A stretch of 40,349 bases of DNA from Salpingoeca rosetta (lineage: Eukaryota > Protista > Choanoflagellata): NCBI GenBank assembly GCA_033442325.1, contig JAWQFM010000012.1:1706229-1746577 (forward strand), given 5' to 3'. The translations under genes were made by a program, and so were the position numbers. The notes under the pieces were generated by a model, which was not told the DNA's origin, made no database searches, and saw only the letters and a list, made by a program, of their open reading frames with translations. Each line of letters opens with the position of its first letter. The first letter of the stretch is position 1. This document shows, piece by piece, positions 1 to 32,723 of the stretch.

Positions 1-515
1 TTGCTGGCGTACAAGGCACGCGTGTGACTGTGACCGGTGAGCGTTTGCTTGGAGGCGGAAGCTCCATTGCTGCTGTACAGGTTGCTGGTGTGGAAACACG
101 TGTGATTGAGTCCAGCAACAACACGCATGTTGTGCTGCGAGCAAGCAACGGCACGGGGAGCGGAGACATTGAGCTGATTGCGGACACGGGCGCGAAGACT
201 GTGGCGAATGTGACGTTCAGCTACCTGGAGCTGGGTGTTATTACTGCAGTGCGCCCGGCTATTGGGCGCGTGGGCACGCTCGTGACGATTGAGGGCGAGC
301 GGCTTCAGAGCGGAGGGAGCGCTGTGGCACGCGTTGACCTGGGTGGTGTTCCTGCAACGCTGCTGCACGGCAATGACAGCACGGTTGTTGTGATTTGCTC
401 TGCAGGCAGCGGTGCTGGTGCGGTGCGCGTGACAAGTGACGTTGGCGGCTTTGTGGAAGGTTTGCTGTGGACATTTGTGGACTCACGCATCGACAGTGTG
501 GAGCCGAGTCAGGGC
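1..515 (+). repeat. Long direct repeat copy 1 (matches 13708-14222)
   Basis: Identical by eye to 13708-14222; offset 13,707 bp = 4,569 codons. Antisense ORFs 305-490 and 14012-14197 are identical. Confidence 0.95.
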
Positions 516-14268: not shown

Positions 14269-14368
14269 NNNNNNNNNNNNNNNNNNNNNNNNNNNNNNNN
14301 NNNNNNNNNNNNNNNNNNNNNNNNNNNNNNNNNNNNNNNNNNNNNNNNNNNNNNNNNNNNNNNNNNNN
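14269..14368. other. Assembly gap (100 N, probably unsized)
   Basis: Run of exactly 100 N. Confidence 1.
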
Positions 14369-14476
<108 letters not shown>

Positions 14477-15422
14477 CGCAATATTTCTGTATGTCGTGAG
14501 TCGTACGTACACTTCCAACCCTGATTTCAGTTGTAATGTTCCCTTTTTAATTTTGTGTTGTCGTATTCTACCGTTGTAAATTATGACCCGCTGCATCGAC
14601 CCAAGTGCCTATTTTGCACTCCTGCTCACTCCTACTTGAGAACATGTGGTCGCGTTTTACACCGATGCTGTGCGTTTTTGTCCCATTTGTCCACGTCAGG
14701 TAGGTTACGAAGATTGGCGAAAGGTATCCACATCCGCCACAGCCGCCCCACCCACTCGCCACAAAACACACGCACGCAAGCAAAGCAAAGAACGATCGAG
14801 AATAAATGCTTCGTGTCTGTGGTCGCAAGCAAGCAAGCCAGGCAGAACAAAAAAAAAAGGCAAGCGTCAGGGCGTGGGAAATTTGTTCTCAGGCGCTTCT
14901 TCTGTGTGTGCTGTGCACGCGGGTAAATTATTGTTGCGACGACCCAGCCACCGCCACGCACATTTCCCCCTTGGTTTGCTTTCCTTTTGCTCCTGCCTGC
15001 TTTCTTGCTGCGAGTCGAGGTGAGGCCGACAAAGCAAGAGGCCAGCAAGCAAGCACTGCCACCGCTTGCTTTGCTCGTCAGAGAAGGACACGCGAGCAGT
15101 GGACACGAGCGACACTGCGACCGACAGGCAGAAGGAGGACCCCTTGAACCCTCACCAGCCTTGTGTGAGGCGGCGTTTGAGTGTGGTTGCCAAAACACGG
15201 AGTGCCGAGAGCACTTCAGCAAACACCACGATGATGATGATGAGGACTGAGCAACAGCCTCGTCCTCTTCCTCGTACAAGGAGAAGAAGAAGAACAAGAA
15301 CACGCGCACAGCCCCCTGTTTCCAAGAGGAAGGGGGTGGCACCCACCTGCAGCAACAGCAACAGCAACAGCACCAACGCCAGGAAGACCAGGAGCTTACT
15401 GCTGCGCAACACACCCAAAACA

Positions 15423-16145
15423 ATGAGGCAGACAGCGTGGTTGGTTGGGCTGTCACTGTGTCTCGTCCTGCTGAGCGTGGCTGCAGGCAGCACCTCAACC
15501 AGCAGCATCGGAAGCATTGACAGCAACCACAACCACACAGTGACCGCGCCACCTGCTCCACCAGGGCCGGCTGCCCCCGTTGTTTTGCAAGCGTTCCTCG
15601 ATCGCGAGCAACTTCACGCCGAGAGCAGCAGCCCCGATGCTGCACGCACCGGCACCACATTTGTTGGCACAGATCACGACGCCTTGCACCATGACATGCA
15701 AGGCGACGGCCACCGCCAGCAACAACAACCACAGCAAGGGGCGCACCAGCAATGGGATGCCGAGGACGATGGCAAGCCCCTCCACTTCTCGGACTTTTTC
15801 ACGGTTCACCCGGACCTGTTCTTCGACACGCTGTACCAACAGGAGACGTTTGTCAACACGCGGCCAGGCGGCGCACAGACCCTGTCGCCCAGCCTGCAGG
15901 CCGTGGCAAAGCCTCTCGGCGACATCCAGCGCATCTGCGACGCCTTTGAGAAGCAGCCCAAGAAGAAAGGCGGCATCTTTGTGAGTCGCTGCATGGTGTT
16001 GGTGTGGTTTGTTTGGCGGGCATGCGTTTCTGCTGGGCTGTCCTGGAGTCAAGTACTTTGTTGTTTGTTGCACGAGGAGTGATTTAACCTCTTCATTCTC
16101 ATTACTGTTGACTCACCCCCTTGTTTGATCCATCACCCACCCACC

Positions 16146-16223
<78 letters not shown>

Positions 16224-19200
16224 GATCAAGGATGAAGGTGCCACGAGGCAGGTGACGTCGTGCAAGCAAATGAATGATGAGTTGGACGCTGGAGCAGGCA
16301 TGGTCGTGCGCTTCGAGGATCTCGTGGACTGCCCTGTCAAGGACAACGTGGAGCTGTTGCGGCAGGGCGTGCGCGACGTCTTCGGCACCTACTCCACCGC
16401 GCACGTGTACTACGCCACACAGGACGAGTCACGCGCTCTTCTGCCACACACGGATCCATACGACGTCCTCGTCATCCAGCTCCAGGGCTCGAAGCGCTGG
16501 ACCACATGTGTGCCGGACGCATATGTGAGTGACAGCAACGACGACGACGACGACAGTGCCAACGAGCGCAGCAACGCCAACAGCACGGCGGCCGACCGCC
16601 CGCCCTCCGAGGCAGAGGTGCTCGCCGGCTTCAACGCGGCCCAGCTCGGCCAGCTGCAGGAGATCCGCAGCCAGCGCCAACAGGGATGCACAGGCTATCA
16701 AGACAGCATGCTTCGCGGCATGCGCTGCACCAACTTCACCCTGCGGGAAGGCGACACCATGTACATGCCAAAGGGCATCATCCACTTTGCCCTCACCGAG
16801 GAGCAAGGGTCGTCCCACATCACCATCTCCCTGGAACGCAAGGGCCTCGCCTGGGCCGATGCGCTCATGTACGGCGCCACCGCAGCAGGCAGTGTGCTCC
16901 ACAACCGCCTGTTCCAGACCCGCTTCAAGCAGGCCATGCTCAAGCTGCTTAGCGACTACCGCGGTGTTGAGTTTCTCGAAGCCATGCCCTCGTGGAACCT
17001 TTCCCCGGGCAAGCTGTGCCCACTCGACACCCAGCAGTCACCCTTGCACGACCCAGTCTCGTCTGAGGACCTCCTGCACATGCTTCTCGCGCCCTCAGAT
17101 GCAGCCCCGTATGCGCCCGTCATGGCCGCCGCGGGCCCTCCGCCACACACCACAGACCGAGCTGCCTTTACCGAGCGCTACGATACACTGTGCAGAGCCA
17201 TGACCCCGTTTGTCCATGAAGCGTACCTGGACGCGGGCAACCTGGACGCGTACCTCAACCCGCAGGCCATCATGGCCTTGGTTGACAGCGTGTGCAACGA
17301 CGACACGGCTGAGAGCGTCATCGACAAGCTGTGCGAGGACGGCCGCCTCCCGATTGATGTCACGGCCGCCAAGTTCCGCTCGCAGTCGCAGCAGCAACAA
17401 CGGCAACAGCGGCCGCAACGCCAGCAGCGCCAGCAGCGCCAGCAGCGCGAGGTGCGTGTTGTGTGTGGATGCATGTGAATGTGCGTGTGTGAGTGTGGAT
17501 GCATGTGAATGAGAATGTGAATGTGTGAGCGATTTTGAATGTGTTTTTCAAGGAAGATCACGTGCTCCTCCGTCTTGCATGGACAAGCACCTGTCCTCAT
17601 GATTGTCGCTTCCTGTCTCTTTGTGTTCGACTTTGACAACAGCAATTGCGCCCGCAAAGGCGCCAGCGCGAAGAAGCAGAGCTGTCCCGTGACAAGCGCG
17701 CTGCCGTCGTCACGTACACCTGCTATGGCAGCTGCGACACCGGATGTGATAGGTATGCAAACCATGTGCAAACCATCGAAGTGTCCTTACACGAAACACA
17801 CACACACACGCACATGTGGCCATCGCTCCACACCACACGCCTTGTTTGTTGCGACTCACTCGTGTTTGCATCCATTCCCTCTTCGATTTCTTGACAGTCA
17901 AAGTTGCACACAAAGCTGTGACACCAGCTGCGACAGCGGCTGTGATTCAAGGTTTGATCGGGTTGACATCCGTGTATTTGGACACTTATGTTGTGCATGT
18001 GTGCAGGCAAAAGTTACTGTGTGCCTTGACCCCATACCTTTCGCCTTGCACTGACGCATCCTTGTCACGACACACGCACACATAAACACACACTCAGTTG
18101 CAACCTTTGTGATGACGGATGTGACACGGGGTGTGATTACGGCTGCGACAGCGGCTGCGACTACTACAAGTCAGTTGGCAGTCGCCTGCTCGCTTGGCAC
18201 ATTGTTGGGTGCCTTCGCTGCATCTTAACCTGTGCTCGACCCGTTCTGTGCAACCTCTAGCTCTTCCCTCCCTCACACACACGTATACGCGCACATACAC
18301 ACATACACACACACATGCACGCACGCACACACGCACAACTTACACAGGTGCAACACTGGCTGTGATGACGGTTGTGACACTTGTTACTCCGGCTGTGACT
18401 CATCATGCAATGGTACGCATGGGGCACCAACAGCCTATCGATGCACGTGCTTGTGCCAAAACGCCACAACTCTGAGTTCGGCATTTCCCCACGTAACACG
18501 CACTTGAGATCCTCACGTGCTGTTTGGCTGCTATTGTGCAACATCACACAGGTGGTTGTGACGACTACTGTGATGACTACTGCAACGCTGGCTGCGATTA
18601 CGGGTAAGGAAGCTCGTCTCCATACATTCCAAACACACACACACACACACACACGCTTGTGCAACATGCTGGCGCGAGTCCTGTTTGAGCTTGCACGGCA
18701 ACCCAACACGTGCATGACCTCACACTGTTCACCTGTTGCCGCTCGAATGTTCTTCTGTCCCCTGTTCTTTCTCCTTTGCCGGCTTCTCTTTGCCAGCTGC
18801 GATTATTATTGCGACTCTGGATGCGACTCGTAAGTTCAACATAGACAGGCGTGCGTGGAGCTGTTCGCACGCATCGATGTTGGCCGCTTGCTCGCTTTTT
18901 GTTGTTGTCTTCTCTTCTTCTGTTCCTGTACCTTCTACTGCTGCCCACCGCTCATGAGCTGTCTCACACGTCCGTGACCTTCAGGAGCTGTTCGACGTCC
19001 TGCTCAAGCTGTGATGACAGCTGTGATTCCAGCTGCGTCATTTTTAGCCTTGGATGCGACAGTGAGTGCAGAGCAAATCTCTCTTGTGCTTCCGAGCACC
19101 ATCTGCATATCACACACCGCAAGCGCGTGCTTTTACGCTTGTGATGCCGTTGACTCGTGTGCTTGTGTCGTTAACTCAGCATTCTATCACCAATTGGTTG

Positions 19201-19622
19201 GTTCCATTTGCACCACCATTTACAGGCAGTTGCGACAGCAGCTGTGATTACTGTGTCACCACCTGCGACGACTCCTGCGACACCTCGTGCGACGGAGGCT
19301 GTGGTGCGTTGCTCAAACATGCCACACCATGCATCATTGCCCCAGCCTCCCGTGTTGCACGGCAACGTACAACGGATGGCATTCGTGGTCTAACATTTGG
19401 ACGCATGCGGTGTTTGCCCACATAACTTCAGACGAGGGCTGTGATATCTGCTACAGCGGATGCGACTATGGCTGCGACATCTGCTACGACAGCTGCGATG
19501 ACTGTGCGTTTGTCTTGTGAATTCTTGCTTGCAAATGATAGGCTTGTGAGGTCATTTGCTGGCTTGTCACTGGGAACACGAGCTTGCTACACGGGAGCGC
19601 ACACATCACACACGTTCTCGTT

Positions 19623-19653
<31 letters not shown>

Positions 19654-19657
19654 ACGC

Positions 19658-19743
<86 letters not shown>

Positions 19744-22700
19744 ACGCACACCCACACCCCACATGCACACGCGCGCGCGCTTTCCACTGATGCCTTTGCG
19801 CTTGCCAGATTGCAACGGGAATTGCGACTATGGATGCGACGACTCATGTGCTTGGGTGAGTGATATCGTCAACATGTTCGTCAGTGAGACGACTTTAGCG
19901 CAGTGCCACATGCTTCCTCCTCACTCACATTGTCCTCCGCTCACGATTCCCCGTAAACCCCACATCAACACCGACATTGCTGCAGACATACTGCGACGAC
20001 TACTGTGACGATGGCTGCGGTCAGTTACCACCGACATCCCACCTGGCCTGCCAATGCTTGCAGGCTTGCACATGTCCTGTAAAGTATATTGACTGGCATG
20101 ATGATCGTCTTGTTTTGTGGGTGTGTTGCCAAAATCTCACTCCGTTCAACTCATCCCACCCGATGACCGTGCTCTCGTCGCGTTGTTGACACGCCAACAC
20201 CAACAGACGATTCATGTGGTGAGTGCATGCACCTGCTGAAATGTATTCTCTTCAATCGTGCCCTCTGCTGTTTTTGCTGATGTGCAACAGCCATCACCGC
20301 CTTGCTGACAATTCTTGATTTTCCAATACACAAGCTCACATGCACCAAACTTGCGACGCTCAACTACTCGACTTCCCCTTCTTCCCAACACAGACACTGG
20401 CTGTGACGGCCCATGCGATTCGTAAGATGTGTCGGTCTTGTCTGTTCACTCACATTACATGTTGCTGGCGCGACTTGATGGTCACTGCGACATTGTCCTC
20501 CCCTGCACGATTGATCCATTCACATTCAACACTACTCACTTGTCACAACTCACACTGGTTGTTGTTGGCATCCATGCGTTATTTGCGGTTCATCGTCCTC
20601 AGGGGCTGTGATGACAGCTGCGGTGCGTTCCAACTCCGTTTGCCCTCATTGCGTTGATGGCATTCTACGACAGTACTGTGTCGACCCTATTTGATGTGGC
20701 TCATGCATTGCCTTCGTCTGCTGCACGGCCGCCTTCTCCGCTCACTTTCAATTCATGTTGACGAACCTCCCTTCTTTTCAAATCGCTGTCTGTCATCACA
20801 GATGACTCCTGCGACACGTGCACCCCGATCAGCTGCGACACCGGCTGTGACAGCAGCTGCTACTGCAACCCTNNNNNNNNNNNNNNNNNNNNNNNNNNNN
20901 NNNNNNNNNNNNNNNNNNNNNNNNNNNNNNNNNNNNNNNNNNNNNNNNNNNNNNNNNNNNNNNNNNNNNNNNNNNNNNNNNNNNNNNNNNNNNNNNNNNN
21001 NNNNNNNNNNNNNNNNNNNNNNNNNNNNNNNNNNNNNNNNNNNNNNNNNNNNNNNNNNNNNNNNNNNNNNNNNNNNNNNNNNNNNNNNNNNNNNNNNNNN
21101 NNNNNNNNNNNNNNNNNNNNNNNNNNNNNNNNNNNNNNNNNNNNNNNNNNNNNNNNNNNNNNNNNNNNNNNNNNNNNNNNNNNNNNNNNNNNNNNNNNNN
21201 NNNNNNNNNNNNNNNNNNNNNNNNNNNNNNNNNNNNNNNNNNNNNNNNNNNNNNNNNNNNNNNNNNGGAACAAGCGGCTGCACGTCATGCACCGCTTGTC
21301 CATCTTCCACATACGAGACATCGCCATGCACCTCAACCTCAAACCGAGGGTGCACTCGCTTGACAGTGTGCACGGGCAGCCAGTACGAGAAGACTGCTGC
21401 GACGGCGACGAGCGACCGTGTGTGCCGCGGGCTGACGACGTGCGGTGCTGGGGAGCAGGAGAAGGTGGCGCCGACGGCGAGCAGCGACCGCGTGTGCGAG
21501 GCGTGCCCAGCTGGGACAACGGATGCCAACAGCGACGGCAGCGACGCGTGCGTGACGTGCGGCGGTGGGACGTATGTGCCAGCTGGGTCGACTGGGACTT
21601 GCTCGCAGTACGAGTGCAGCGCGGGCACGGCTGACACGGACAGCAACGCTGGGACGGCGTGCGAGGCGTGCGACGGGACGACGACGTACCAGCCGAGCAA
21701 GGGCCAGGAGCGGTGCCTGAGTGTGAAGACGTGCGGGGCTGGCGAAGAGGAGACGACGTCGCCGAGTGCGACGCGGAACCGGGTGTGTCAGCCGTGCCAG
21801 CTCGGGTCGACGTTCAAGGCGCAGAGCGGACAGAGCACGCGGTGCATTTCTGTGACGACGTGCGGCGCTGGTGAGGAGGAGATTGCTTCGCCGACGCTGT
21901 CCACAGATCGGCAGTGCCGCACGTGTGCCAGTGGGACGTTCAAGGCTGCTGCTGGGCAGAGCACGACATGTATTGCCGTGAGCACGTGTGCTGCTGGCTT
22001 CACGGTACGTCACTGTGTAGTGTGTGTGTGTGTGTTTTGACTGACTGTGTGCATGTGTGTGCATATGTGTGCATATGTGTGCATGTTTGTGAATGAACTT
22101 GGGTTGTACAAGCCGTGCGTGAGTGTGTGCCTGGGTTGTATGTTTGGTTACGATGGCTCACGCGTGGTTGGTGTGATGCGACTGCGATGCAACAATGTGC
22201 TTGTGTGTGCGTGTTTGTGTGTGTGTTTGTAGGAGGATGTTGCTCCGACACCATCGTCTGATCGGGTGTGCGTTGAGTGTGCGCCCGGGACATTTAAGGC
22301 GACTGCTGGCGATGGGACGTGTCGTGCGCACAGGACGTGTGAGGACACCGAGTATGAGACGGTTGCGCCGACGAGCTCGTCTGATCGGAAGTGCAAGGCG
22401 CTGACGGTGTGCCAGGATGACGAGTGGGAGTCCAAGGCACCGACAATAACCACGGACAGAGAGTGCTCTCCTTGCGGCAGGTGTACGGATGGGCTGACAC
22501 TTGACAAGGCATGCACTGATACGTCGCCAACCAAGTGTGTTGGGTGTGACGAGTGTGCGTCCGATGAGTACACGCTTTCGTCATGCACGTTGAGCTCTCA
22601 AACGCAGTGCCGACAGTGCACGACGTGTGGCAACGATGAGTACCAGACGAAGGCTTGCAGCGTGTCGCAGGACACGGAGTGTGCGACGCTGACGACGTGC

Positions 22701-25700
22701 AGCAGCACGCAGTTTGAGGTTGAGGCGCCGACAGCGACGCGTGACCGCCGGTGCAAGGACCTGACGGCGTGCCAGCCTGGGGAGTACGAGTGCACGGCAG
22801 CGACGCTGACGACGGACCGCGAGTGCTGCGGGGTGACGCAGTGTGTGCCGGGCAGCGAGGAGACGTCCGCGCCGACGGCGACGTCTGATCGGGAGTGCCG
22901 GCAGTGTGTTGCGGGCACGACGGATGCTGACGGAAGCGGGACGACGCCCTGTGTTGCGTGCAGTGCCGGGCACTATGTGCCGCGCGGACGCACTGGCGGG
23001 TGTGCGGCGTTTGAGTGCGCGGCGGGCCACGTGGACCAGGACGAGGATGCTGCGACGGCGTGCAAGTTGTGCGAGGCAGGCGTGAACTATGCCGGGAGCG
23101 CTGGGCTGACGAGGTGCACGTCTGTGAGCGAGTGCGGCGCTGGCGAGGAGGAGACGAGCGCGCCGACAGCGTCAACGGACCGGGTGTGCAGCACGTGCGC
23201 GTCTGGCAAGTTCAAGGCGACGACTGGGCAGACGCCGTGCGAGGCTGTGTCGACGTGCGAGGAGGACGAGTACGTGTACCGTGCGGCGACTGTGAGCACG
23301 GACACGCAGTGCCGAGCGCTGACGGCGTGCAGTGATGAGCAGTATGAGACGCGCGCGCCGACAGTGAACAGCGACCGGGAGTGCACGGGGCTGACGACGT
23401 GCGGGAGCGGGGAGTACGAGACGCGTGCGCCGACGGCGACGACGGACCGCAAGTGCGCGAGTGTGACGCAGTGCGACTCGACGCAGTTTGTGGTGTCGAA
23501 GCCGACGGCGACAACGGACCGGGACTGCGCTGAGTGCGACCGGTGCGACAGCGGGACGCAGTATGAGACGGCGACGTGCACGGCGACGACGAACAGGGTG
23601 TGTGCGGACCTGACGGTGTGTGCGGACACGGAGTACGAGTCTGTTGCCGCGACGGACACGAGCGACCGCAAGTGCTCGAGCTGCCGGGAATGCACGTCGT
23701 CTGAGTATCTTGTGTCTGGGTGCAGCGAGAGCGCGAATGCTGTGTGCAAGGCGTGCACTGAGTGCCCAAGCGGGACGTTTGTGTCGACGGCGTGCACGCC
23801 GCTTGCTGATGCCGAGTGCACGGAATGCACGCGGTGCGGGAGCGGGTACTTTGTGCAGTCGCCGTGCACGAGCGAGGCAGACACGACGTGCAAGCGGTGC
23901 CGGTCGTGCGCGAGCGGAGAGTATCTGCACACGGCATGCACGACCCCTTTGCCGATCGCCAATGTGCAACGGTCACACCGTGCTCATATGGGGAGGTTCA
24001 ATTCGCCCCTCCCACCCCCACATCTGATCGGACGTGCGTGACTCCTGATCCTCGCTTGAACGCGACACTGCTCGCTGCAGTTGCGCCGCACGTGCCCGTG
24101 CACGTGACAGTGCAGTCCACGTTTCCGGGCGTTGTTTTGCCGTCCCCCTTTTCATCAGCCGTGTCGTCCCCGTCGTCATACGAGGCCCAGCTGACCGTTG
24201 GCCACACAGGAATGGTATCGGTTCGTGTTGGTGAAGGCTTGGTTGCAAGCGACACTTACACGCTTCCGCTGCGGTCGGCGGCGGCGTTTGCTGCGCGAGT
24301 GCTGAGCGTTGAGCTGACCAGCACGGCGCGCACTGCGAGATTGCTGTACTCTGTACGCGATGACCTTGGAAATGTTGCGTGCTCATCGTCAACAGCAACC
24401 TTTGTGCTGCGGCTTCGCTCCCCCTCCTCCAGTCTGTCTCTGGTCCAAGTGATGAGCGAGTGCACCGCAACGAGCGAGTCGCATGGCGTGTGTGTGGCCG
24501 TGCTCTCCCTTCCCCAAGTGTGGTTTTCGCCTGAATCGCACACGTCGCCCAATGAGGCTATTGTGGATGTTCTTGTCACGAGCGACGCCGTTGTTGCCTC
24601 TGGCGGTGCGGACCTTGACGAGGACGGGTACTCCCAGGTGGGCACGCTGCCGCTGGTTGTGCCAGCCTCATCGGCTTCAGAGGATGTGGAGGATATTCGT
24701 GTGCGTCTGCCAACGCATGCCCTGACGCCGGACCAGCCTGGCGTTGTGAGTGTGTCGAGCTCGTTCGCGTTCACCGCAGAGGTGTTCCGTGTGAAGTGCG
24801 TGTCGAGCCACCCGGATCTTGTTCTGGGCGAGGTGTCGATTGATGACAGCGTGTGGACTTCCCGGGCGTCCAACCTTGACGGGCGGTCGCTGGTTGTTGC
24901 GGGCTTGTTGATGAACGGCCACCGCGTGCCAAACAGCTTTGGCGAGCAGGAGCTCTTCTCGTTTGACGTCGCCCTTGCAGATGGTGTTGACCTGAGCGGT
25001 GGTGCGCCTGGGTTGGCTTCCGCCACCGTGTCTTGCACGACGGAGGAGCTGAGTGACGTGAGTGATGCCGTGCGCATTCCCCGCGGTGCCACATCCTTCC
25101 CGACGAACGTGACAATGAGCGATCGCTTTGGCCAGCACGCCAGTGGCCAGGGTCGTCTGGCTGTGCGCCCAACTGCCACGCGGGCGCTGCTTGCGCACAC
25201 GGAGCGTGCCGTGTTGGTGAACACGGGGCTGCTGACTGGCATCGAGACAAGCACGCAGCTCGTGGTGACCGCATACGATGAGTTTGGTGCCTCGTCCACC
25301 GCCACCCCAACGGAGTGCTCGCTGGACGCTGGTGCTTCGGGCGCCGCCCTGGCAGCGGTGTCTGCGAACTGCGATGCGGTTACGCTGTCTTCTTCGGCCT
25401 CATTGCCCTTTAGCAGCCCCGGCGGACAGGCTGTGGTGACTGTGAGACAAGGCCAGCTTGAGGCCACCACCGTTGTGAGTGTGTACGTGCCAGCGTCTGC
25501 GCCAAGCGTTGCGTTGGATCGCACGAGCCTGCGTGCGTTGGTTCCGCGTGAGGTGTCGCTTGCCTTTGGCGTTCGTGAGCCCTGTGCTGCGGCGACCGTG
25601 TTTGAGCGCACTCGCGTGCACGTTCTGGCCAACTTCACCTGCACAGGCGTGGATGGACAAGCGTGCCTGCCTGCTCTTCCGGGACAGGTGCAACTGGATG

Positions 25701-28700
25701 TGGCACAGCTGGCACTGGAGCTCACGGTTGCGGACGACGACGTTGCTCGCGTGAAAGACACGTACGTGGTTGGCGTTGCAGACGGGACGACCGAGGTGCG
25801 AGTGGAGCAGCCCAACAGCGGCGTTGTTCTGGCCTCCACGCCCGTGCACGTGACACGTGATGAGGTGGTGGAGATTGACGGCCTGTACGCGGGCAGCGCG
25901 GAGTCTGCGACGTTGTCGCTGGACCACGATGCCGTTCACCAGTTGTTTGACCAGGTGCCTGTGCACGTGCGTCTTCAGTCGTCGCCGCTGCGCGCGGAAG
26001 GCGACGTGACGCATGTGTATGCTTTTGTCGTGCTGCGGGATGGCACACAGTTTCCGATTGACGTGCTGGACGGCCTGTACATGGTGCCGCTCGATGCGGG
26101 CCAGCTCGTTCCGGTTGCTCCGGCGACGTTTGCTGTGGCTGCTGGTGCCCGGAACGGAGTTGCCTCCCGTGTTCGCGTGGTCTGGGCCCCGCCCGCACTC
26201 CAGGGCGGCGTGTGCAGCGATGCCGATGGCGGAGTCGCAGGGGGCGGAGGCGCCACAACCCCGGCGCCACCATACACCTACGTGCTCGCCCAGGAGGACG
26301 TGAGTGTGGACTTGCAGCTCCGAAAGCCAACAGGCGTCCGCCTGACGAACACGGCGAGGCGGCTTGTGCTTGAGACAGACCCAGCGGCCAGCGTGGGCGG
26401 CGCGAGCATCCCGACCTCCATGCAGCTGTCGGTGCTTCTTGAGTATTCTGGTGGCGGCAGCGCTCAGGACGTGACCACGGATTCGCGGGTGCACTGGACC
26501 CTGAACAACCAGGACACTGGCGGGGATGTGGTGAGCATTGAGGTGGTGGATGGCAAGCTGGTGCTGAGTGCCACCAAGCCTGGAGACGCCGTGCTTGTGG
26601 TGATGGTGGACACACCAGACAACCCGATTGTGACAATGTTCAGCGTGCACGTGACCAGGTCTGTGGGGCTGACAACAACAAGCACGCCTTACCCGCCATA
26701 CGCCGGCTCCTCGTCAACAAGCAAGGCTGACCTGCGCCGCGTATTTGGGACCACACCACCGTCGTACCAGCAGTTGCAGCTGACAAGCCGCCTGGTGCTT
26801 GAGGATGGCCACGAGGTGCCGCTTCCGCAGGGGAGCGTGGTCTACAGCACAAACGACAAAACATCGACCCACACGGACAGTGGTGGGGCCCAAATCAGCG
26901 TGCCGTCTATTGGAGTGGAGGGCAATGTGGTGAGCGCCGTTGCCTCTGGCGTGTCGGCAGTGGAGTCTTCGTTTGGTGGCTTTGTTGACGACTCGCTGAC
27001 GGTGACGGCCACAGACACGGAGCCCGTGTACGTGACGGCACTTGAGAACGTTCACCTGCTCTCTGGACCAACCCTGCATGGCGAACCAAACACGACGACG
27101 ACACAGGCGATGGTGAGTGCGGTGCTGAGCGATGGCACGCGCCTGGACAACCTGTTCTCAGCGGACGGTGTTGCTGCTGTGCCCGGGTTGGTCACGTGGA
27201 CGGTGGAACCCCCGTCTTTGGCGGTCGCTTCTGCCGTCGAAGTGGATGCAGGCACCGGTGTGATCACCTTGCTGGGCAACCACTACGCACACGTCGTCCT
27301 GACAGCTAGCACCTTGGTGCCCGAGCCCAACAGCACGGCAAGCAGCTCGCTGCTGCCTAACGTGCTTGAGGCCAACACCACGTTTGCGTGCAACGTGGAC
27401 CCTGCGCCAGGGGAGGTGGACCTTGGCTCGCAACTCTCCGTGCCCCTGCCTTCCGTGCACGTGTCCACCATCTCCACCACCAGCGACGGCAACAGCAGCA
27501 GCAGCAGCAGCAGCAGTGGCCTGTTTGATGTTCCTGTGCGCGTCAACATGGGCGAGGCAGCGTCGCTGGGCGCCTTCCACATCATCATTGAGATGAACTC
27601 GTCTGCGCTTGAGTTTGTCAGCGCAACCCCTGCGTTCTCTGGCCACTTTGATGTGGGCGCAACCGGCGATGAGGTCTCGCTGGCCGGGCTGGTTGGCGAC
27701 TCATCTGTGTCGGGACCAGCAGCCCTCGTGGCCACTGTGCGCGTCCGGGCTGTGCGTGCTGGCGTTCATCGCCTGCGTGGGCGGGTGGAGGACCTGTTTG
27801 ACCGGTCGGTGCCACGCGCGCAGCCCGTGGGCGGCAGTCGTCACGGCCGCACGTCGCCGGCCGCTGACGTTGCTGTGGTTGTGTTTGGCAGCCGCTTCCC
27901 AACGGCGGGCAGCGCCAACGCCACGGCGCCACTGCATAACATGGCGCGCCGTGAGGCTGCGTTGAGCTTTGGCGCCTGGCTTGACGAGCCCGCAGGCTCC
28001 GACGTGCACGGCGTGGTTCGCCGCGCTGCCGACTCCACGTCCGGCCTTGTTGGTGCGGATGTGGATGGCGACGGGCGATTCAGCACAGCTGATGCGCTGT
28101 TCACGCTGCAGTACACTGTGGAGCGCGACAACGCCTTCCAAACGGTGGTTGGCGTGCAAATCCAGGCGCTGGTGAACGGCACGCAGCGGCTGCTGGCCAT
28201 GGATGCAAACAAGGATGGCGCAGTGAGCTCTGGCGACGCAGATTACATGCTTGCTGTTGTGAACAGCAAGCGGCGGTTTGTTGAGCTTCCGGTGGTGGAG
28301 GCCCTTGCGACGCAGGGGTGCCAGTACGTCGTGAGCGTCTCTGTTGCGGACCGACTCGGCAACGCGCCTGACCCTGCCAACACGGGTGTGTATGTGCTGC
28401 TTGAGTCCACCAGCACGTCGTTCTCGCGCGCCCTCGTGTCGCGTATTGCGGACCTGCAGCAAGAGGCAGCGGCGCTCGCACAGCTTGCTGCAACGGCCAC
28501 CAATGACACCACCACCACCACAGGTCCCAGCACTAGTGCTAACGCCAACAGCACGACGGCGAGCGGTTTCAGCGGGGCAGGTGCGCCGCATCTCCCCCGC
28601 ACGTGGCTGATGGCGGATCTGAACGCCACGTCGCGCCCAACGCGTGCGGTGCTGTTGCCTCTCGTCCCGCAAGCGGACACGGGGGCCAGCAGCCACGCCA

Positions 28701-29968
28701 CCGTTGCTGTGGGAGGCGCCACATACGTTGGCACGTTCCCTGCACCACTGCTATCGAGCAGCGAGCTGGCGCAGCTGGCGGACGACCCGCACCTTGGTTT
28801 ATCTGTGATTGAAGTGACGCGAACAAACCTGGGCACAACGGCGTACGTGCACACGGGCGCATCTGCAGCCGGCACGCGCACGTTTTCTCCGCTGAGGGTG
28901 ACGGGTCTTGGCGTGGACGGCGGGAGCGCCACGGATGTGGTGCTCACGGTGGGCCCCACCTACGGCTACAACCCAATGCAGTTTGTGAAGGCGGCGATTG
29001 ATGTGCGAAACGCATGCACGCTGTCGTGTGGGGAGGGCGAGTACGGCGACATCGACGCCTGGGTGTGCCGTGCGGTGCGCCCGTGTGACCTTTCCTCAGA
29101 ATACATGGTTGCACCTGAAACCCCGACTTCGAACCGCGTGTGTGAGACGCTGACCGTGTGCCGCCCCAGCAGCAAGTACGAGACGACGGCCGCCACACCG
29201 ACGAGTGACCGTGTGTGCACGCCGCTGACCCGCTGCCACCCAACACAGGAGTTTGTGAGTGTCAACGCAACTGCGACGACCGATCGCGTGTGTGCGCCGC
29301 TGACCACGTGTGACGCCACGCGTGAGTACGAGGTGCGTGCGCCGACCGAGTACACGGACAGGGTGTGCGGCCAAATCACCGCGTGCAACGGCACACAGAG
29401 CGAAGTGGCTGCGCCAACGCCCACCTCGGACCGCCAGTGCCAGCGATTTGAGACACAGAAGTCTGCCTCGGCATCGTCGATGCTGAGTGTGATTGGTCCC
29501 GCGGCGGGTGGTGTTGGCTGTCTGCTGCTGGTGCTGGCGCTGATTGCCTTTGTGCGGCGGCGGCGTTCGCGCACGAGCGTGGATGCGGCTTCAACAACAT
29601 CGCGCGACGTGTTCCTCAAGGTCAACCCGATGTACGATGAGGGCGTGGCGCAGAAACGGCGGGGCCCGGGCGACGACGACATGTTTTATGAGGATCCACA
29701 GACACTGCTTGGGTTTGATGCGTCGCTGTTTGAGGGCGGAATGCACCACGCCAAGAACCCGCTGTACGTTGGCTACGATGAGGAGGGCAATCCCAAGGGC
29801 AAGAAGCAGGCGTTTGCAGATGATGACGACGATGGCCTTGTTGCTGTTCTCGATGAGGACAATGGCTACGTTGACATTGACGACAAGCCCACCACTGCCA
29901 GCAAAGACTACGGTGTGTGCATGTATTGTGAGTGTTGTGTGTTGTGTGTGTTGTGTGTGTGTGTGCAC

Positions 29969-30036
<68 letters not shown>

Positions 30037-31901
30037 ATCTGGACTCGTACATCTGGAAGTCGACTCTGTTGGTTTCACTCACACAACGATGGTGGATTGA
30101 TTATGCTTCTTTCCTGGTCTCAACTCTGACTGTGTGCTTGTGGTTGGCAGATTTGTTTGACCTGTACGCTGAGCCCGAGGCTGTGCTGTCCAAGCGTGCC
30201 TCGCGGCGGTTCAGTGTCTCGTCCATGAATGAGGACACTCCGATCATTCGTACGTTGTGTGGCCACGTGTTGCCTGCTTGCTCTTGTGAACCTGCCTTCG
30301 AATGCGAGTTGGTGTTGTGTGTTGCGTGTAAATGTGTTGTGTGTGTGTGTGTGTGTGCGTGCGTGCGTTGTGGGTTGACACTGGCGAGTGTGATTTGTGT
30401 GCGGCAAGCTCTTACCCAAGTATTCCGCTTCGATCGGATTTTATGTTGTTGTTGCTTGCCTGCAGGCAACCCGCTTTATCAAGGGATCAGCGATGATGAT
30501 GATGACGACGACGACGACGATGCCAGCTTCGGTGAGGAGCGTAGCGTGGCGTTTGAACTGTTGTGACAATTGTGTTCTGGTATGCTTCGGGTGTGCTGTG
30601 TTCCAACTTCACAGTCACTCCGCGTGGATTGTTGTTGACGCATCGTGTAACGCTGTGCTGCCTCGTTTCCTCAGGCTTTGCACCAGGCCCTGAGTACATG
30701 GACGTGGAAGGGACCGACAACAACACAGCTGGTGCGCTCGCTTGCTTGCTTGCTTTGAGCATGCGCGCTCCTGTGATCTATGCTGTCTTTATGGGGTTCC
30801 TTTGACAGTGCTCGCCTTTGTATCTCTTGACTCGCTGCTGACTGACCCCATTCGTGCCTTATCTTCGTCATGCTGCTGTTGTTGTGTTTTGTTTTCTTGG
30901 GGCAGCGCCAGTTGGTGACGAGTACATGGACTTTGATGCTGCACCTTCTGCTGCTGGCCGCGCCAAGAAGTCTCCCAAGAAGGGCGTTACTTACGGTGTG
31001 TGCGTGTGTGTGTGTGTGTGTGCGTGTGTGTGTGCGTGCTTCATTTGAATTGCTGTACCTGACACTTTTTGTTGTGCGTGTACTTGCTTCGAATGCATCA
31101 CCACTTCCGTTCCTCATGAACGGATGCATGTTAATTACCATGCCCAATACGTGTAGACAATCCAGACGCGTTCCCCCATGACCCGACGGACGAGTACATG
31201 GACATGGCTTCGCCTGCAAAGCGTGGCGGTGACTACGCCGCCGTCTACGGTGCGTGCGATTGGTTGCTTGTTCGCTTGCCCATGTGACTGTGCTGCGCTG
31301 TTTCCGTGCACAACACTTGCATGGCGCACGTCTCACTCACCTGCCCTCCCCCGCCCCCTTCATTCTGTGTCACGTGCAGACACCCCGGGTGGTGTCGACG
31401 AGTACATGGACATGAACGCGGCCTCGACGACCCGAGGAAGCGAGTACGCCACCATCTACGGTGAGTGGCTGATGCTCCACATCTTGCTTGACGCGTGCTG
31501 GAAACCTTTTTGCAAGTTGTGCACTACCGTTCCAGTTTGCTTGTGTCGATTGTGTTGCTTATGTCGCTTGTGTCGCTTGTGTTGGTGTGTCAAGCGCTGA
31601 AGAATCTACTTGCCTTGAGTCAACGCTCCCCCAACATTGAGCCTTCATCACATTCACTGGCACCAACACTTGCTGGTTCCCTGCGTTTTGTGTTCTCGTT
31701 TGATGCAGACAACGTGGATGACGGGCAGGCTGAGCAGTACTTTGACATTTGCCCGAACAAGCAGACCAATGATGACGTGTACGCCATGATTTACGGTGAG
31801 CTGCGTGTTAATGAACACTCGTACAGAGCGGGGCAATGCGAAATTCGTGTCACCTCTTCCCTCGCACGCACACACACACACACATACACATACACACACA
31901 C

Positions 31902-31986
<85 letters not shown>

Positions 31987-32637
31987 TACACACACACACA
32001 CACATACACACATGCCGTCGCACATTTTCGAATACATGCGCTGATTTGCGCTTCTCTCCTCACAAACTGGCTGGTCTTGCCTTTCTGTGTGCGTGCTGGG
32101 CCTTCATCAGATGCGGTCGCGCAACCCAAGGACGAGTCGACGGCACGGGCTGGTCCCGGCGCTGACGACGACGATGACGATGAGGGTGGCGACCAGGTGT
32201 ACATGAACATTGACGAGGACCCCATCTACGATCACAACTACATTGCATCCTCAACTCTCGGTGCGACGTGTGTTGTGTTGTGTTGTGTTGTGTTGTGTTG
32301 TGTTGTGTTGTGTTGTGTTGTGTTGTGTTGTGTTGTGTTGTGTGCGGGTGTGGGTGTGTGGGTGGGTGTGCTGCTACTCGCTCTGTGTGCTTGGCGCGCC
32401 TCCGATCTCACAGCAACGCATGCGTTGCCATCTGTCAATGCCTGTCATGCCCCTTCTCTCTGTGCAGAAGCGGTCGATCCTTTTGCAGACACGTACTTCA
32501 ACGTCGACGATCAGGACCGTGCTGCGTACGATGCAGTTGATGGCGGGTATGGATTTGGCAACGTGGCCGATGATGGCGACGAGCCAATCTACGACAGCCC
32601 AGACGTCTTCAACGAAGACAATAAGGACCACAACTAA
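15423..32637 (+). CDS. Multi-exon ~4,000-aa type-I membrane receptor-like protein (signal peptide, JmjC, CDxx repeat, TNFR-like repeats, TMEM132-like, cohesin, dockerin, TM, Tyr-motif tail)
   Basis: Hand-spliced exons, all GT-AG and phase-consistent: 15423-15980, 16225-17451, 17643-17752, 17898-17951, 18098-18169, 18348-18412, 18552-18603, 18797-18829, 18985-19061, 19226-19303, 19432-19503, 19809-19855, 19986-20019, 20207-20218, 20394-20421, 20603-20622, 20802-(20872, gap), (21267)-22004, 22233-29912 (one frameshift near 23945), 30151-30249, 30466-30531, 30675-30731, 30906-30995, 31157-31249, 31380-31460, 31709-31795, 32111-32260, 32468-32637 (TAA). Starts MRQTAWLVGLSLCLVLLSVAAG. Continuity across the gap is inferred. 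Confidence 0.8.
15780..16870 (+). other. JmjC / cupin-4 domain of ribosomal-oxygenase type (NO66/MINA53/ycfD-like), exons 1-2
   Basis: FFDTLYQQ...AHVYYAT...LLPHTDPYDVLVIQLQGSKRW...FTLREGDTMYMPKGIIHFA...SSHITIS...WAD. HxD at 16447-16455, Lys at 16492, distal His at 16783 match the Fe(II)/2OG ligands of this family. Confidence 0.88.
16148..16220. repeat. (CA)n microsatellite abutting the intron 1 acceptor
   Basis: Perfect CA run ending at gcag|16225. Confidence 0.95.
17721..20872 (+). repeat. (CDxx)n Cys/Asp-rich protein repeat, ~250 aa with ~63 Cys, split over 15 small exons
   Basis: Spliced: CYGSCDTGCDSQSCTQSCDTSCDSGCDSSCNLCDDGCDTGCDYGCDSGCDYYKCNTGCDDGC...CDDYCDDGCDDSCDTGCDGPCDSGCDDSCDDSCDTCTPISCDTGCDSSCYCNP. 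Confidence 0.88.
19623..19750. repeat. Intronic (CA)n/(CACACG)n microsatellite
   Basis: Seen directly; within intron 19504-19808. Confidence 0.95.
20873..21266. other. Assembly gap (394 N) inside the receptor gene
   Basis: N run flanked on both sides by open, Cys-rich coding sequence. Confidence 1.
21267..24040 (+). other. Tandem TNFR-like Cys-rich repeats (ectodomain)
   Basis: Dozens of units like C..LTxC.xxEYExxAPTxTxDRxC and C..CxxCxxxxYxxxxCTxxxDxxC; intron 22005-22232. Confidence 0.8.
24280..26330 (+). other. TMEM132-like ectodomain module (conserved region, cohesin-like, Ig-like domains)
   Basis: Ordered motifs resembling animal TMEM132 (from recall): GVCVAVLSLPQVWF, IRVRLP, VLVNTGLLTG, VSANCD, VSVYVP..PSVALDRTSL, FERTRVHVLANF, VVGVADGTTEVRV, LRDGTQFPID. 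Confidence 0.72.
27521..27890 (+). other. Cohesin-like domain
   Basis: LFDVPVRVNMGEAASLGAFHIIIEMNSSALEFVS...VSGPAALVATVRVRA follows the cellulosomal cohesin beta-sandwich pattern. Confidence 0.65.
28049..28262 (+). other. Dockerin-like domain (paired Ca2+-binding loop-helix repeats)
   Basis: GADVDGDGRFSTADALFTLQY ... MDANKDGAVSSGDADYMLAVV: two D-x-(D/N)-x-D-G-x(4)-D repeats. Confidence 0.8.
29480..29566 (+). other. Transmembrane helix plus basic stop-transfer
   Basis: MLSVIGPAAGGVGCLLLVLALIAFV followed by RRRR, after a last block of Cys repeats (~29010-29450). Confidence 0.9.
31868..32012. repeat. Intronic (CA)n/(CACATA)n microsatellite
   Basis: Seen directly; within intron 31796-32110. 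Confidence 0.95.
32268..32342. repeat. Intronic (GTGTT)n pentanucleotide repeat
   Basis: Seen directly; within intron 32261-32467. Confidence 0.95.

Positions 32638-32653: not shown

Positions 32654-32723
<70 letters not shown>
32654..32723. repeat. (GT)n microsatellite just 3' of the receptor stop codon
   Basis: Seen directly. Confidence 0.95.

What the first reader, a model, noticed from the sequence alone, without database searches (positions are those of the whole stretch)
15423..32637. ~4,000-aa mosaic receptor linking an extracellular oxygenase to a phosphotyrosine-type tail
Seen: open Cys-rich coding sequence on both sides of the 394-N gap; one signal peptide before it, one TM helix after it, no stop before it. 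Inference: one gene, JmjC-CDxx-TNFR-like-TMEM132-like-cohesin-dockerin-TM-Tyr tail. JmjC enzymes need O2, Fe(II) and 2OG, so maturation of the ectodomain could report oxygen or iron status to tyrosine-kinase signalling.
Basis: inference. Interest (0 to 1): 0.8.

Follow-up and report, generated by a model that had tools for sequence, protein, structure and literature searches.

The report
Giant receptor with outside-facing JmjC oxygenase
This is most likely one very long choanoflagellate gene for a ~4,050-residue surface receptor that starts with an iron/oxygen-dependent JmjC enzyme and ends in a tyrosine-rich tail; this kind of protein was predicted from sequence in 2010 but has never been studied at the bench.

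Summary
An ATG and signal peptide lie at 15423, and the stop is at 32635-32637. I count 28 GT-AG exons, one transmembrane helix, and open Cys-rich coding sequence on both sides of the gap.

Comparison still argues for one gene:
- The pre-gap exon stops in the middle of a family-conserved motif.
- An ungapped orthologous marine-metagenome scaffold (L001) has 374 nt at that spot: 233 nt of exon, a 122-nt intron and 19 nt of exon, giving 84 in-frame codons.
- Full-length transcript ORFs from four other choanoflagellates have the same order: signal peptide, JmjC, RxxR site, (C[DN]xx)n module, mosaic ectodomain, TM helix, Tyr tail.

K-mer shares in 20 runs suggest it is an assembly error.

JmjC (MINA/NO66 type, catalytic residues intact), TNFR repeats, TMEM132-like Ig domains and a dockerin are supported. 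The cohesin is only a lead.

Iyer et al. 2010 already described such receptors in Monosiga and proposed redox sensing, so this is a new member of a known kind. The scan also noted paralogues elsewhere in this genome (s1-434346, s1-432416).

The parts
15423..15980 (+). Exon 1: start codon, signal peptide (residues 3-21 hydrophobic) and the N-terminal part of the oxygenase module
   Evidence: The donor is TTT|GTGAGT. Homologues start directly with a signal peptide. In-frame ATGs lie 64 codons upstream (15231-15242), so the true start is not proven.
16225..17451 (+). Exon 2: MINA/NO66-type JmjC domain plus helical C-terminal extension and a Q/R-rich linker. Fe(II) ligands H261/D263 at 16447-16455, 2OG-binding Lys at 16492-16494, third ligand His at 16783-16785
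   Evidence: Pfam JmjC_2, 60.6 bits. The best PDB matches are MINA53 and NO66, with PHTD, GSKRW and PKGIIH aligned to their active-site motifs.
17643..20872 (+). Fifteen micro-exons encoding an RDKR site (17688-17699) and a 256-residue (C[DN]xx)n module. Exons: 17643-17752, 17898-17951, 18098-18169, 18348-18412, 18552-18603, 18797-18829, 18985-19061, 19226-19303, 19432-19503, 19809-19855, 19986-20019, 20207-20218, 20394-20421, 20603-20622, 20802-20872 (the last runs into the gap)
   Evidence: every exon is bounded by YAG| and |GT, the phases close, there is no stop, and the pre-gap CDS is exactly 870 codons; 63 Cys, 49 of 62 Cys-Cys spacings equal 4, and Asp or Asn follows 51 of 63 Cys. The product is collinear with P0002, P0010, P0011 and P0014.
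20873..21266 (.). Assembly gap (394 N). It probably hides about 84 codons of a GCC2/GCC3-like Cys-rich module plus a small intron
   Evidence: The orthologous scaffold L001 has 374 nt between the same two motifs: 233 nt exon, 122 nt intron and 19 nt exon, in frame. Not read directly.
21267..22004 (+). TNFR_c6-type Cys-rich repeat exon; its start is hidden in the gap
   Evidence: Pfam TNFR_c6, E 4.2e-20. 62% identical to L001 1030-1767. Donor ACG|GTACGT.
22233..23947 (+). First part (frame A) of the large exon: TNFR_c6-type repeats
   Evidence: Pfam TNFR_c6, E 7.7e-40. Acceptor tag|GAGGAT. 56% identical to L001 2058-3788.
23944..23947 (+). Run of four C where the reading frame shifts by one base inside conserved TNFR-type coding sequence; probably an assembly error
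   Evidence: both frames read as TNFR repeats and there is no room for an intron; all 20 holder runs from 10 studies hold exactly 2 of the 4 sampled words of 23900-23990. The best of the same runs hold 0.93-0.98 of 22266-30100.
23942..29912 (+). Second part (frame B) of the large exon: one TNFR repeat, the TMEM132-like region, cohesin-like and dockerin-like modules, five membrane-proximal TNFR repeats, the TM helix and the start of the tail
   Evidence: 32% identical over 1,257 residues to the L001 ORF 4453-8091.
25187..25867 (+). TMEM132-like Ig domains: 4th at 25187-25495 and 5th at 25595-25867
   Evidence: Ig_TMEM132_5th scores 47.1 bits (cut-off 28). Ig_TMEM132_4th scores 25.9 bits (cut-off 27). 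The 2nd domain is weak (E 0.0056).
27371..27850 (+). Cohesin-like beta-rich stretch (a lead only)
   Evidence: Atlas features: 55 of 60 nearest named clusters carry Pfam Cohesin, score 0.91. No Pfam, NCBIfam or PDB sequence match. The fold prediction failed, pLDDT 36. The stretch is conserved in L001 at 42%.
28043..28261 (+). Dockerin-like module with two D-x-D-x-D-G type calcium loops
   Evidence: Pfam Dockerin_1 scores 27.8 bits (cut-off 22.9) when scanned alone. The best PDB match is a cellulosomal dockerin, 4uyp_B, E 0.008.
29009..29450 (+). Membrane-proximal TNFR_c6 repeats
   Evidence: Pfam TNFR_c6, E 2.9e-12.
29477..29548 (+). Single transmembrane helix, followed by RRRR
   Evidence: Hydropathy scan. 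It is the only hydrophobic segment apart from the signal peptide.
29549..32637 (+). Cytoplasmic tail of 419 residues (27 Tyr, 101 Asp/Glu), encoded by the end of the large exon and nine phase-1 exons: 30151-30249, 30466-30531, 30675-30731, 30906-30995, 31157-31249, 31380-31460, 31709-31795, 32111-32260, 32468-32637 (stop TAA 32635-32637)
   Evidence: The tail has three NPxY motifs, four EYMD motifs, YMNI, and several YxN and YxxP motifs. Pfam finds no kinase or SH2 domain.

Best explanation
The stretch 15423-32637 is one gene on the + strand, with 28 visible exons. It encodes a type I membrane protein of about 4,050 residues. The protein belongs to the choanoflagellate family of receptor-like proteins whose N-terminus is a secretory-pathway MINA/NO66-type JmjC oxygenase.

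Domain order:
1. Signal peptide.
2. JmjC domain with an intact HxD...H iron triad and 2-oxoglutarate lysine.
3. Q/R-rich linker.
4. RDKR convertase-type site.
5. Conserved (C[DN]xx)n Cys/Asp module, encoded by 15 micro-exons.
6. GCC2/3-like module, mostly hidden in the gap.
7. About 20 TNFR-type repeats.
8. TMEM132-like Ig region.
9. Cohesin-like stretch.
10. Dockerin.
11. Five more TNFR repeats.
12. TM helix.
13. Acidic tail with 27 tyrosines.

Inferred mechanism. The JmjC module works in the ER/Golgi lumen, where Fe(II), O2 and 2-oxoglutarate are available to other secretory 2OG oxygenases. There it hydroxylates residues of secretory proteins, most plausibly in its own polypeptide. It is then separated from the stalk at RDKR by a furin/kexin-type protease. 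The mature receptor acts in adhesion or ligand binding, and it signals or is endocytosed through phosphorylated Tyr and NPxY motifs.

Shown: the exon structure, the domain identities, the conservation of catalytic residues, and the family architecture. Inferred: continuity across the gap, cleavage, substrate, and tail phosphorylation.
For: In the window:
- All splice sites are canonical and the phases close from exon 1 to the gap, giving 870 codons.
- The Q/R-rich composition continues across the exon 2/3 junction.
- Only one signal peptide and one TM helix are present.
- Exon GC is 62.8% against 50.9% for introns.

Domains:
- Pfam JmjC_2, TNFR_c6, Ig_TMEM132_5th and Dockerin_1 all score above their cut-offs.
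- MINA53 and NO66 are the best PDB matches, with active-site motifs aligned.

Family:
- Of 1,255 JmjC relatives, many are 1,900-4,300 residues long with the JmjC at the N-terminus.
- Members include complete transcript ORFs from Hartaetosiga balthica, Salpingoeca infusionum and Microstomoeca roanoka, plus P0198 (species not looked up), and annotated proteins of M. brevicollis and S. rosetta.
- They share the order signal peptide, JmjC, RxxR, (C[DN]xx)n, GCC-like, mosaic ectodomain, TM, and NPxY/Tyr tail.

The gap:
- The pre-gap sequence ends on the family motif C-x-C-N-P, which is always followed by G-[FY]-x-G.
- The TARA (marine metagenome) scaffold L001 is collinear with the post-gap gene and is ungapped here: 84 in-frame codons and a 122-nt intron, 374 nt in all against the 394 N.
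- TARA contig L002 shows the JmjC exon, then an intron, then an RTRR + CD exon.

The frameshift is probably an assembly artefact. The literature describes this kind of protein.
Against: - No splice junction and no gap content is therefore observed directly.
- As written, the N-run puts the two sides out of frame.
- The frameshift at 23944-23947 would truncate the protein if it is real.
- No annotated protein of this locus came back in three word searches.
- Cleavage, substrate and phosphorylation have no direct evidence.
- Three long relatives (P0048, P0084, P0107) show no CD module by pattern search, so the JmjC-CD coupling is not universal.
Confidence: 0.72

Rival explanations
1. Two genes. 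A secreted JmjC-(CDxx)n protein ends inside the gap, and a separate TNFR/TMEM132-like receptor starts there with its own promoter and signal peptide.
For: The gap is unread and nominally out of frame (394 = 3n+1). No RNA evidence could be obtained. No long annotated protein of this locus was retrieved.
Against: - The pre-gap exon stops mid-motif with no stop or donor.
- About 394 nt is too little for a 3' end, an intergenic promoter, a 5' UTR and a signal-peptide exon.
- The ungapped orthologue L001 is continuous and in frame at this spot.
- All full-length relatives carry the JmjC and the TM/tail in one ORF.
- The post-gap sequence starts inside a Cys-rich repeat that aligns to the interior of that module.
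Confidence: 0.07
2. A decaying gene. The frameshift at 23944-23947 is real, so the product ends after the TNFR repeats without TM helix or tail, or the locus is a pseudogene.
For: The window sequence has four C, and the frame changes with no room for an intron.
Against: - All 20 runs from 10 studies lack exactly half of the four sampled 31-letter words around the site, while holding 93-98% of the surrounding 7.8 kb.
- About 6.9 kb of open, conserved coding sequence and nine correctly phased exons follow the site.
Confidence: 0.07
3. Surface oxygen/iron/redox sensor. The JmjC stays on the mature receptor outside the cell, and its turnover or its modification of the ectodomain gates tyrosine-phosphorylation signalling.
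For: Relatives join the same JmjC to an SH2-like C-terminus (P0084) or a tyrosine-kinase-like one (P0107) (read from sequence motifs, not Pfam-scanned). Iyer et al. report such SH2 and tyrosine-kinase fusions in Monosiga. The catalytic residues are conserved across the family.
Against: - An R-x-[KR]-R site sits just after the JmjC module in most relatives, which points to separation.
- 2-oxoglutarate is not expected in sea water (general knowledge).
- This protein has no kinase or SH2 domain of its own.
Confidence: 0.14

Closest known systems
Receptor-like proteins with extracellular MINA/NO66-clade JmjC domains in Monosiga brevicollis (Iyer, Abhiman, de Souza, Aravind 2010, PMC2938197); for example XP_001747551 (P0025), and S. 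rosetta PTSG_10194, PTSG_13037 and PTSG_11500
   Same: Signal peptide; N-terminal MINA/NO66-type JmjC with intact catalytic motifs; Cys-rich GCC2/3-type modules; long mosaic ectodomain; single TM helix; tail used in tyrosine signalling. The RxxR site and the (C[DN]xx)n module are shared.
   Different: The ectodomain here is TNFR repeats + TMEM132-like Ig + cohesin-like + dockerin, not Sushi/HYR/Ig-like or F5/8C. The JmjC is only 31-56% identical to these proteins. There is no SH2 or kinase domain.
Human ribosomal oxygenases MINA53 (RIOX2) and NO66 (RIOX1)
   Same: They are the best solved-structure matches. The HxD...H triad, the 2OG lysine and the HxT motif align.
   Different: Those are nucleolar histidyl hydroxylases without a signal peptide (general knowledge). 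Here the domain is secretory, carries a ~70-residue acidic insert, and is fused to a receptor.
Aspartyl/asparaginyl beta-hydroxylase (ASPH) acting on EGF modules in the ER (recalled from memory)
   Same: It works like the inferred mechanism: a lumenal Fe(II)/2OG oxygenase that modifies Asp/Asn in disulfide-rich modules of secreted proteins.
   Different: It belongs to a different oxygenase family and is not fused to its substrates. No homology was tested here.
TMEM132 adhesion proteins, and the TMEM132-type module in choanoflagellate and sponge cadherins (Sanchez-Pulido and Ponting 2017, PMC6030884)
   Same: Ig_TMEM132 5th and (borderline) 4th domains are present, in a type I membrane protein of a choanoflagellate.
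   Different: The 3rd (cohesin), 6th and C-terminal TMEM132 domains were not detected. The module is embedded in a much larger mosaic.
Cellulosomal cohesin-dockerin pairs
   Same: There is a dockerin-type duplicated calcium-loop module, preceded by a stretch with cohesin-like language-model features.
   Different: Both lie in one eukaryotic receptor chain. The cohesin is not confirmed by any profile or fold. Binding was not tested.
TNF receptor superfamily
   Same: TNFR_c6 cysteine-rich repeats.
   Different: There are about 21 SDRxC-type repeat units instead of 1-6. No death domain was found.

Membership tests
Choanoflagellate receptor-like extracellular MINA/NO66 JmjC proteins (Iyer et al. 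2010) | JmjC domain of the MINA/NO66 (Pfam JmjC_2 / cupin 4) clade | tested here: met
   Pfam JmjC_2, 60.6 bits against a cut-off of 22. The best PDB matches are MINA53 and NO66.
Choanoflagellate receptor-like extracellular MINA/NO66 JmjC proteins (Iyer et al. 2010) | Catalytic HxD...H triad and 2OG-binding basic residue kept | tested here: met
   PHTD, GSKRW and PKGIIH align to the MINA53 active-site motifs. The same motifs are found in 12 or more relatives.
Choanoflagellate receptor-like extracellular MINA/NO66 JmjC proteins (Iyer et al. 2010) | N-terminal signal peptide that places the JmjC outside the cytoplasm | tested here: met
   Hydrophobic residues 3-21 follow a basic residue. Homologues start the same way. 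No dedicated signal-peptide predictor was available, and upstream in-frame ATGs exist.
Choanoflagellate receptor-like extracellular MINA/NO66 JmjC proteins (Iyer et al. 2010) | JmjC and extracellular Cys-rich/Ig modules in one polypeptide with a TM helix | tested here: inconclusive
   Met up to the gap by splice phases. Across the gap it is supported only by the orthologous scaffold and the family architecture. No RNA of this organism was seen.
Choanoflagellate receptor-like extracellular MINA/NO66 JmjC proteins (Iyer et al. 2010) | Intracellular SH2 or tyrosine kinase domain | tested here: not met
   Pfam finds no kinase or SH2 domain in the tail. The tail has Tyr motifs only, as do P0010, P0011 and P0014.
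Ribosomal oxygenases (MINA53/NO66/YcfD) | Cytoplasmic or nucleolar enzyme acting on ribosomal proteins | tested here: not met
   A signal peptide and a receptor fusion are present. The substrate cannot be tested here.
TMEM132 | Ordered set of five extracellular domains (conserved N region, cohesin, three Ig) plus TMEM132 C-terminal region | tested here: not met
   Only the 5th domain scores above its cut-off. The 4th is just below and the 2nd is weak. The 3rd, 6th and C-terminal domains were not found.
Cohesin-dockerin pair | Dockerin: duplicated calcium-binding loop-helix segment | tested here: met
   Dockerin_1 scores 27.8 bits against a cut-off of 22.9. PDB match 4uyp_B, E 0.008. Two D-x-D/N-x-D-G loops are read directly.
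Cohesin-dockerin pair | Cohesin: nine-stranded beta-sandwich recognised by profile or fold | tested here: inconclusive
   Language-model features point to cohesin clusters. There is no Pfam, NCBIfam or PDB match, and the model has pLDDT 36.
Receptor tyrosine kinase | Cytoplasmic protein kinase domain | tested here: not met
   No Pkinase or PK_Tyr hit in 23816-30100 or 31495-32637.
TNF receptor superfamily | TNFR_c6 cysteine-rich domains | tested here: met
   E 4e-20, 8e-40 and 3e-12 in three stretches. This is membership at domain level only.

The most novel reading that the evidence does not exclude
The JmjC module is a cleavable pro-domain enzyme. In the ER/Golgi it hydroxylates the Asp/Asn residue that follows nearly every Cys in its own (C[DN]xx)n module, a conserved domain with no Pfam family and more than 40 invariant cysteines. 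It is then removed at the conserved RxxR site. Maturation of a metal- or calcium-binding stalk would then depend on O2, Fe(II) and 2-oxoglutarate. This would be a self-contained enzyme-substrate cassette found across choanoflagellates.
Probability: 0.15. Interest if true: 0.75.

Novelty: new member of a known kind. Interest (0 to 1): 0.45.

Why it matters
Choanoflagellates are the closest living relatives of animals. Their receptors show which signalling parts were available before animals arose.

A whole family of surface receptors that begin with an Fe(II)/2OG oxygenase was predicted in 2010 but has, as far as the searchable literature shows, never been studied at the bench.

This locus adds:
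- a member with an adhesion-type ectodomain (TNFR repeats, TMEM132-like Ig domains, dockerin);
- a family-wide rule: the JmjC is followed by a convertase-type site and then a conserved Cys/Asp module. That rule gives a concrete, testable hypothesis for what the enzyme acts on.

It also flags two assembly defects, the gap and a probable homopolymer error. Either would break any automatic gene model here.

Tried and rejected
- Automatic exon chaining by dynamic programming over-fitted. I replaced it with hand curation checked by script.
- Word searches for this locus's own protein in three length ranges found only paralogues and relatives.
- Exact look-ups of three window ORFs, meant to fetch independent assemblies across the gap, found nothing.
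- Fold prediction of the cohesin-like + dockerin stretch (single sequence, pLDDT 36) and of the CD module (7-sequence alignment, pLDDT 33) both failed. I therefore ran no fold search.
- The cohesin-like stretch gave nothing with PDB phmmer, a two-sequence profile, or NCBIfam.
- The Atlas search with the CD module gave only weak Cys-rich leads at 0.79.
- I considered and rejected an intron to explain the frame change at 23944. No GT...AG pair fits, and the sequence on both sides is conserved coding sequence.

Full report
**What kind of sequence this is.** The window is eukaryotic. It has GC-rich exons, GC-poorer introns with (CA)n and (TG)n microsatellites, and GT-AG boundaries. The closest named proteins are from Salpingoeca rosetta and other choanoflagellates. 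The sequencing runs that hold the stretch all belong to one coded organism with studies from 2010 to 2026. No protein of this locus itself came back from the searches, so I name no species.

**Gene model.** I curated the exons by eye and checked them by script.
- Exon 1 (15423-15980) starts with ATG and a hydrophobic signal-type segment.
- Exon 2 (16225-17451) holds the JmjC domain and ends in phase 0 at GAG|GTGCGT.
- Fifteen micro-exons of 12-110 nt follow (17643-20872). Each is bounded by a YAG acceptor and a GT donor, and their phases close without a stop.
- The pre-gap CDS is exactly 870 codons.
- After the gap come 21267-22004, then a large exon 22233-29912, then nine phase-1 exons to TAA at 32635-32637.
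- Exons total 11.9 kb at 62.8% GC. Introns are 128-315 nt at 50.9% GC.
- Only two hydrophobic segments exist: the signal peptide and one TM helix at 29477-29548.
- Without the gap the product has 3,972 residues.

**Domains.**
- Pfam gives JmjC_2 at 60.6 bits. It gives TNFR_c6 in three stretches (E 4e-20, 8e-40, 3e-12).
- Ig_TMEM132_5th scores 47 bits. The 4th TMEM132 domain is just under its cut-off.
- Dockerin_1 scores 27.8 bits (cut-off 22.9) when the module is scanned alone.
- The best solved-structure matches of the JmjC are MINA53 and NO66. PHTD, GSKRW and PKGIIH align to their iron- and 2OG-binding motifs.
- The dockerin-like stretch matches a cellulosomal dockerin, 4uyp_B, at E 0.008.
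- The claimed cohesin (27371-27850) is supported only by language-model features: 55 of 60 nearest named clusters carry Pfam Cohesin. Every profile search and a fold prediction failed.
- The tail has 419 residues with 27 Tyr and 101 acidic residues. It carries three NPxY motifs, four EYMD motifs, YMNI, and several YxN and YxxP motifs, but no kinase or SH2 domain. Their resemblance to SH2/PTB docking motifs rests on general knowledge, not on a test.

**The CD module.** After an RDKR site (17688-17699) come 256 residues with 63 Cys. Of the 62 Cys-Cys spacings, 49 are exactly four, and Asp or Asn follows 51 of the 63 Cys. This is not mere low complexity. Seven homologues align with more than 40 invariant Cys columns (A1). 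No Pfam family covers the module, and its fold could not be predicted.

**The family.**
- An exhaustive HMMER search with the JmjC exon (ending at 17409) found 1,255 relatives. Many are 1,900-4,300 residues long with the JmjC near the N-terminus.
- Members include complete transcript-derived ORFs from Hartaetosiga balthica, Salpingoeca infusionum and Microstomoeca roanoka, plus P0198, whose species was not looked up.
- Annotated members are M. brevicollis XP_001747551 and S. rosetta PTSG_10194, PTSG_13037 and PTSG_11500.
- Most share the order signal peptide, JmjC, R-x-[KR]-R, (C[DN]xx)n, GCC2/3-like repeats, variable mosaic, TM, acidic NPxY/Tyr tail.
- My spliced pre-gap product is collinear with them over 500-830 residues.

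**The gap.** Testing it was the first task, and I could not read it directly. The indirect evidence is as follows.
1. The pre-gap exon ends on C-x-C-N-P. In every relative that motif is followed by G-[FY]-x-G-x-G-x-x-C, so coding sequence continues into the gap.
2. A TARA (marine metagenome) scaffold, L001, is collinear with the post-gap gene: 62%, 56% and 32% identity over the three stretches.
3. L001 is ungapped at this spot. Between the two motifs that flank our gap it has 374 nt: 233 nt of exon, a 122-nt GT-AG intron and 19 nt of exon. That is 84 in-frame codons, and they align to the transcript-derived relatives. The 394-N estimate fits this well.
4. A second TARA contig, L002, shows the JmjC exon, then an intron, then an exon with RTRR and the first CD repeats. 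That mirrors the exon 2/3 junction here.

A stop plus a new promoter and a signal-peptide exon inside about 394 nt is therefore unlikely.

**The frameshift.** At the four-C run 23944-23947 the TNFR-type reading frame shifts by one base, with no room for an intron. Of the four sampled 31-letter words in 23900-23990, all 20 holder runs from 10 studies hold exactly two. The best of the same runs hold 93-98% of the surrounding 7.8 kb. This is what a local error in the assembly would give, though which words are missing is not known. I treat the shift as a probable homopolymer error, not as decay.

**Comparison with what is known.** Iyer et al. 2010 (PMC2938197) reported a Monosiga expansion of the MINA/NO66 clade. 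They describe receptor-like proteins with extracellular JmjC domains joined to GCC2/3, Ig, disintegrin or Sushi domains and to SH2 or tyrosine kinase domains. They suggested cell-surface hydroxylation or redox sensing through tyrosine phosphorylation. I found no follow-up in the searchable library. TMEM132-type modules and cohesin domains in choanoflagellate surface proteins are also known (PMC6030884).

What this locus adds:
- a member with a TNFR / TMEM132-like / dockerin ectodomain;
- the observation that a convertase-type site and a conserved Cys/Asp module follow the JmjC in most members.

**Mechanism.** I favour a lumenal biosynthetic role, in which the enzyme is cut off at RDKR, over a standing surface sensor. 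The reasons are the conserved cleavage-type site and the likely absence of 2-oxoglutarate outside the cell. Both points are inference. That the enzyme acts on its own C[DN]xx module is attractive but speculative.

**Verdict.** One gene is likely (about 0.85). The cohesin is unproven. The function is untested. The finding is a new member of a known, unstudied kind.

Noticed in passing
window 1-515 and 13708-14222; gap 14269-14368: The first 515 bases of the window are letter-for-letter identical to a stretch 13,707 bases later. That stretch ends just before a 100-N gap, inside a giant IPT/TIG-repeat ORF (24-14268, more than 4,700 residues). This is either a true tandem unit or an assembly mis-join.
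   Followed up: partly
window 23944-23947: A one-base frame change at a run of four C inside conserved coding sequence. K-mer shares in 20 runs point to an error in the assembly.
   Followed up: partly
window 30151-32637: All nine tail exons are phase 1. Four of their eight donors, and the donor of the large exon before them, read TAC G|GT, so these coding units end on a tyrosine. This looks like exon duplication of Tyr-motif units.
   Followed up: partly
window 15231-15242: Four in-frame ATG codons lie 64 codons upstream of the ATG at 15423 in the same open frame. If they are used, the hydrophobic segment would be an internal signal anchor after an Arg-rich N-terminus.
   Followed up: no
window 16148-16219, 19663-19732, 29970-30033, 32654-32723: Long (CA)n or (TG)n microsatellites sit in three introns and just after the stop codon.
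   Followed up: no
L002 108-473: The TARA relative has an ORF with a 7tm_2 (secretin/adhesion GPCR type) hit just upstream of its JmjC gene.
   Followed up: no
L002 3600-3920: In the TARA relative, the phase between the first and second CD exon does not close with the obvious splice sites. This may be a contig error or an unusual splice site.
   Followed up: no
P0107 and P0084 (relatives): Two relatives join the same JmjC type to a TM helix and a tyrosine-kinase-like (P0107) or SH2-like (P0084) C-terminus. This was read from sequence motifs only.
   Followed up: no
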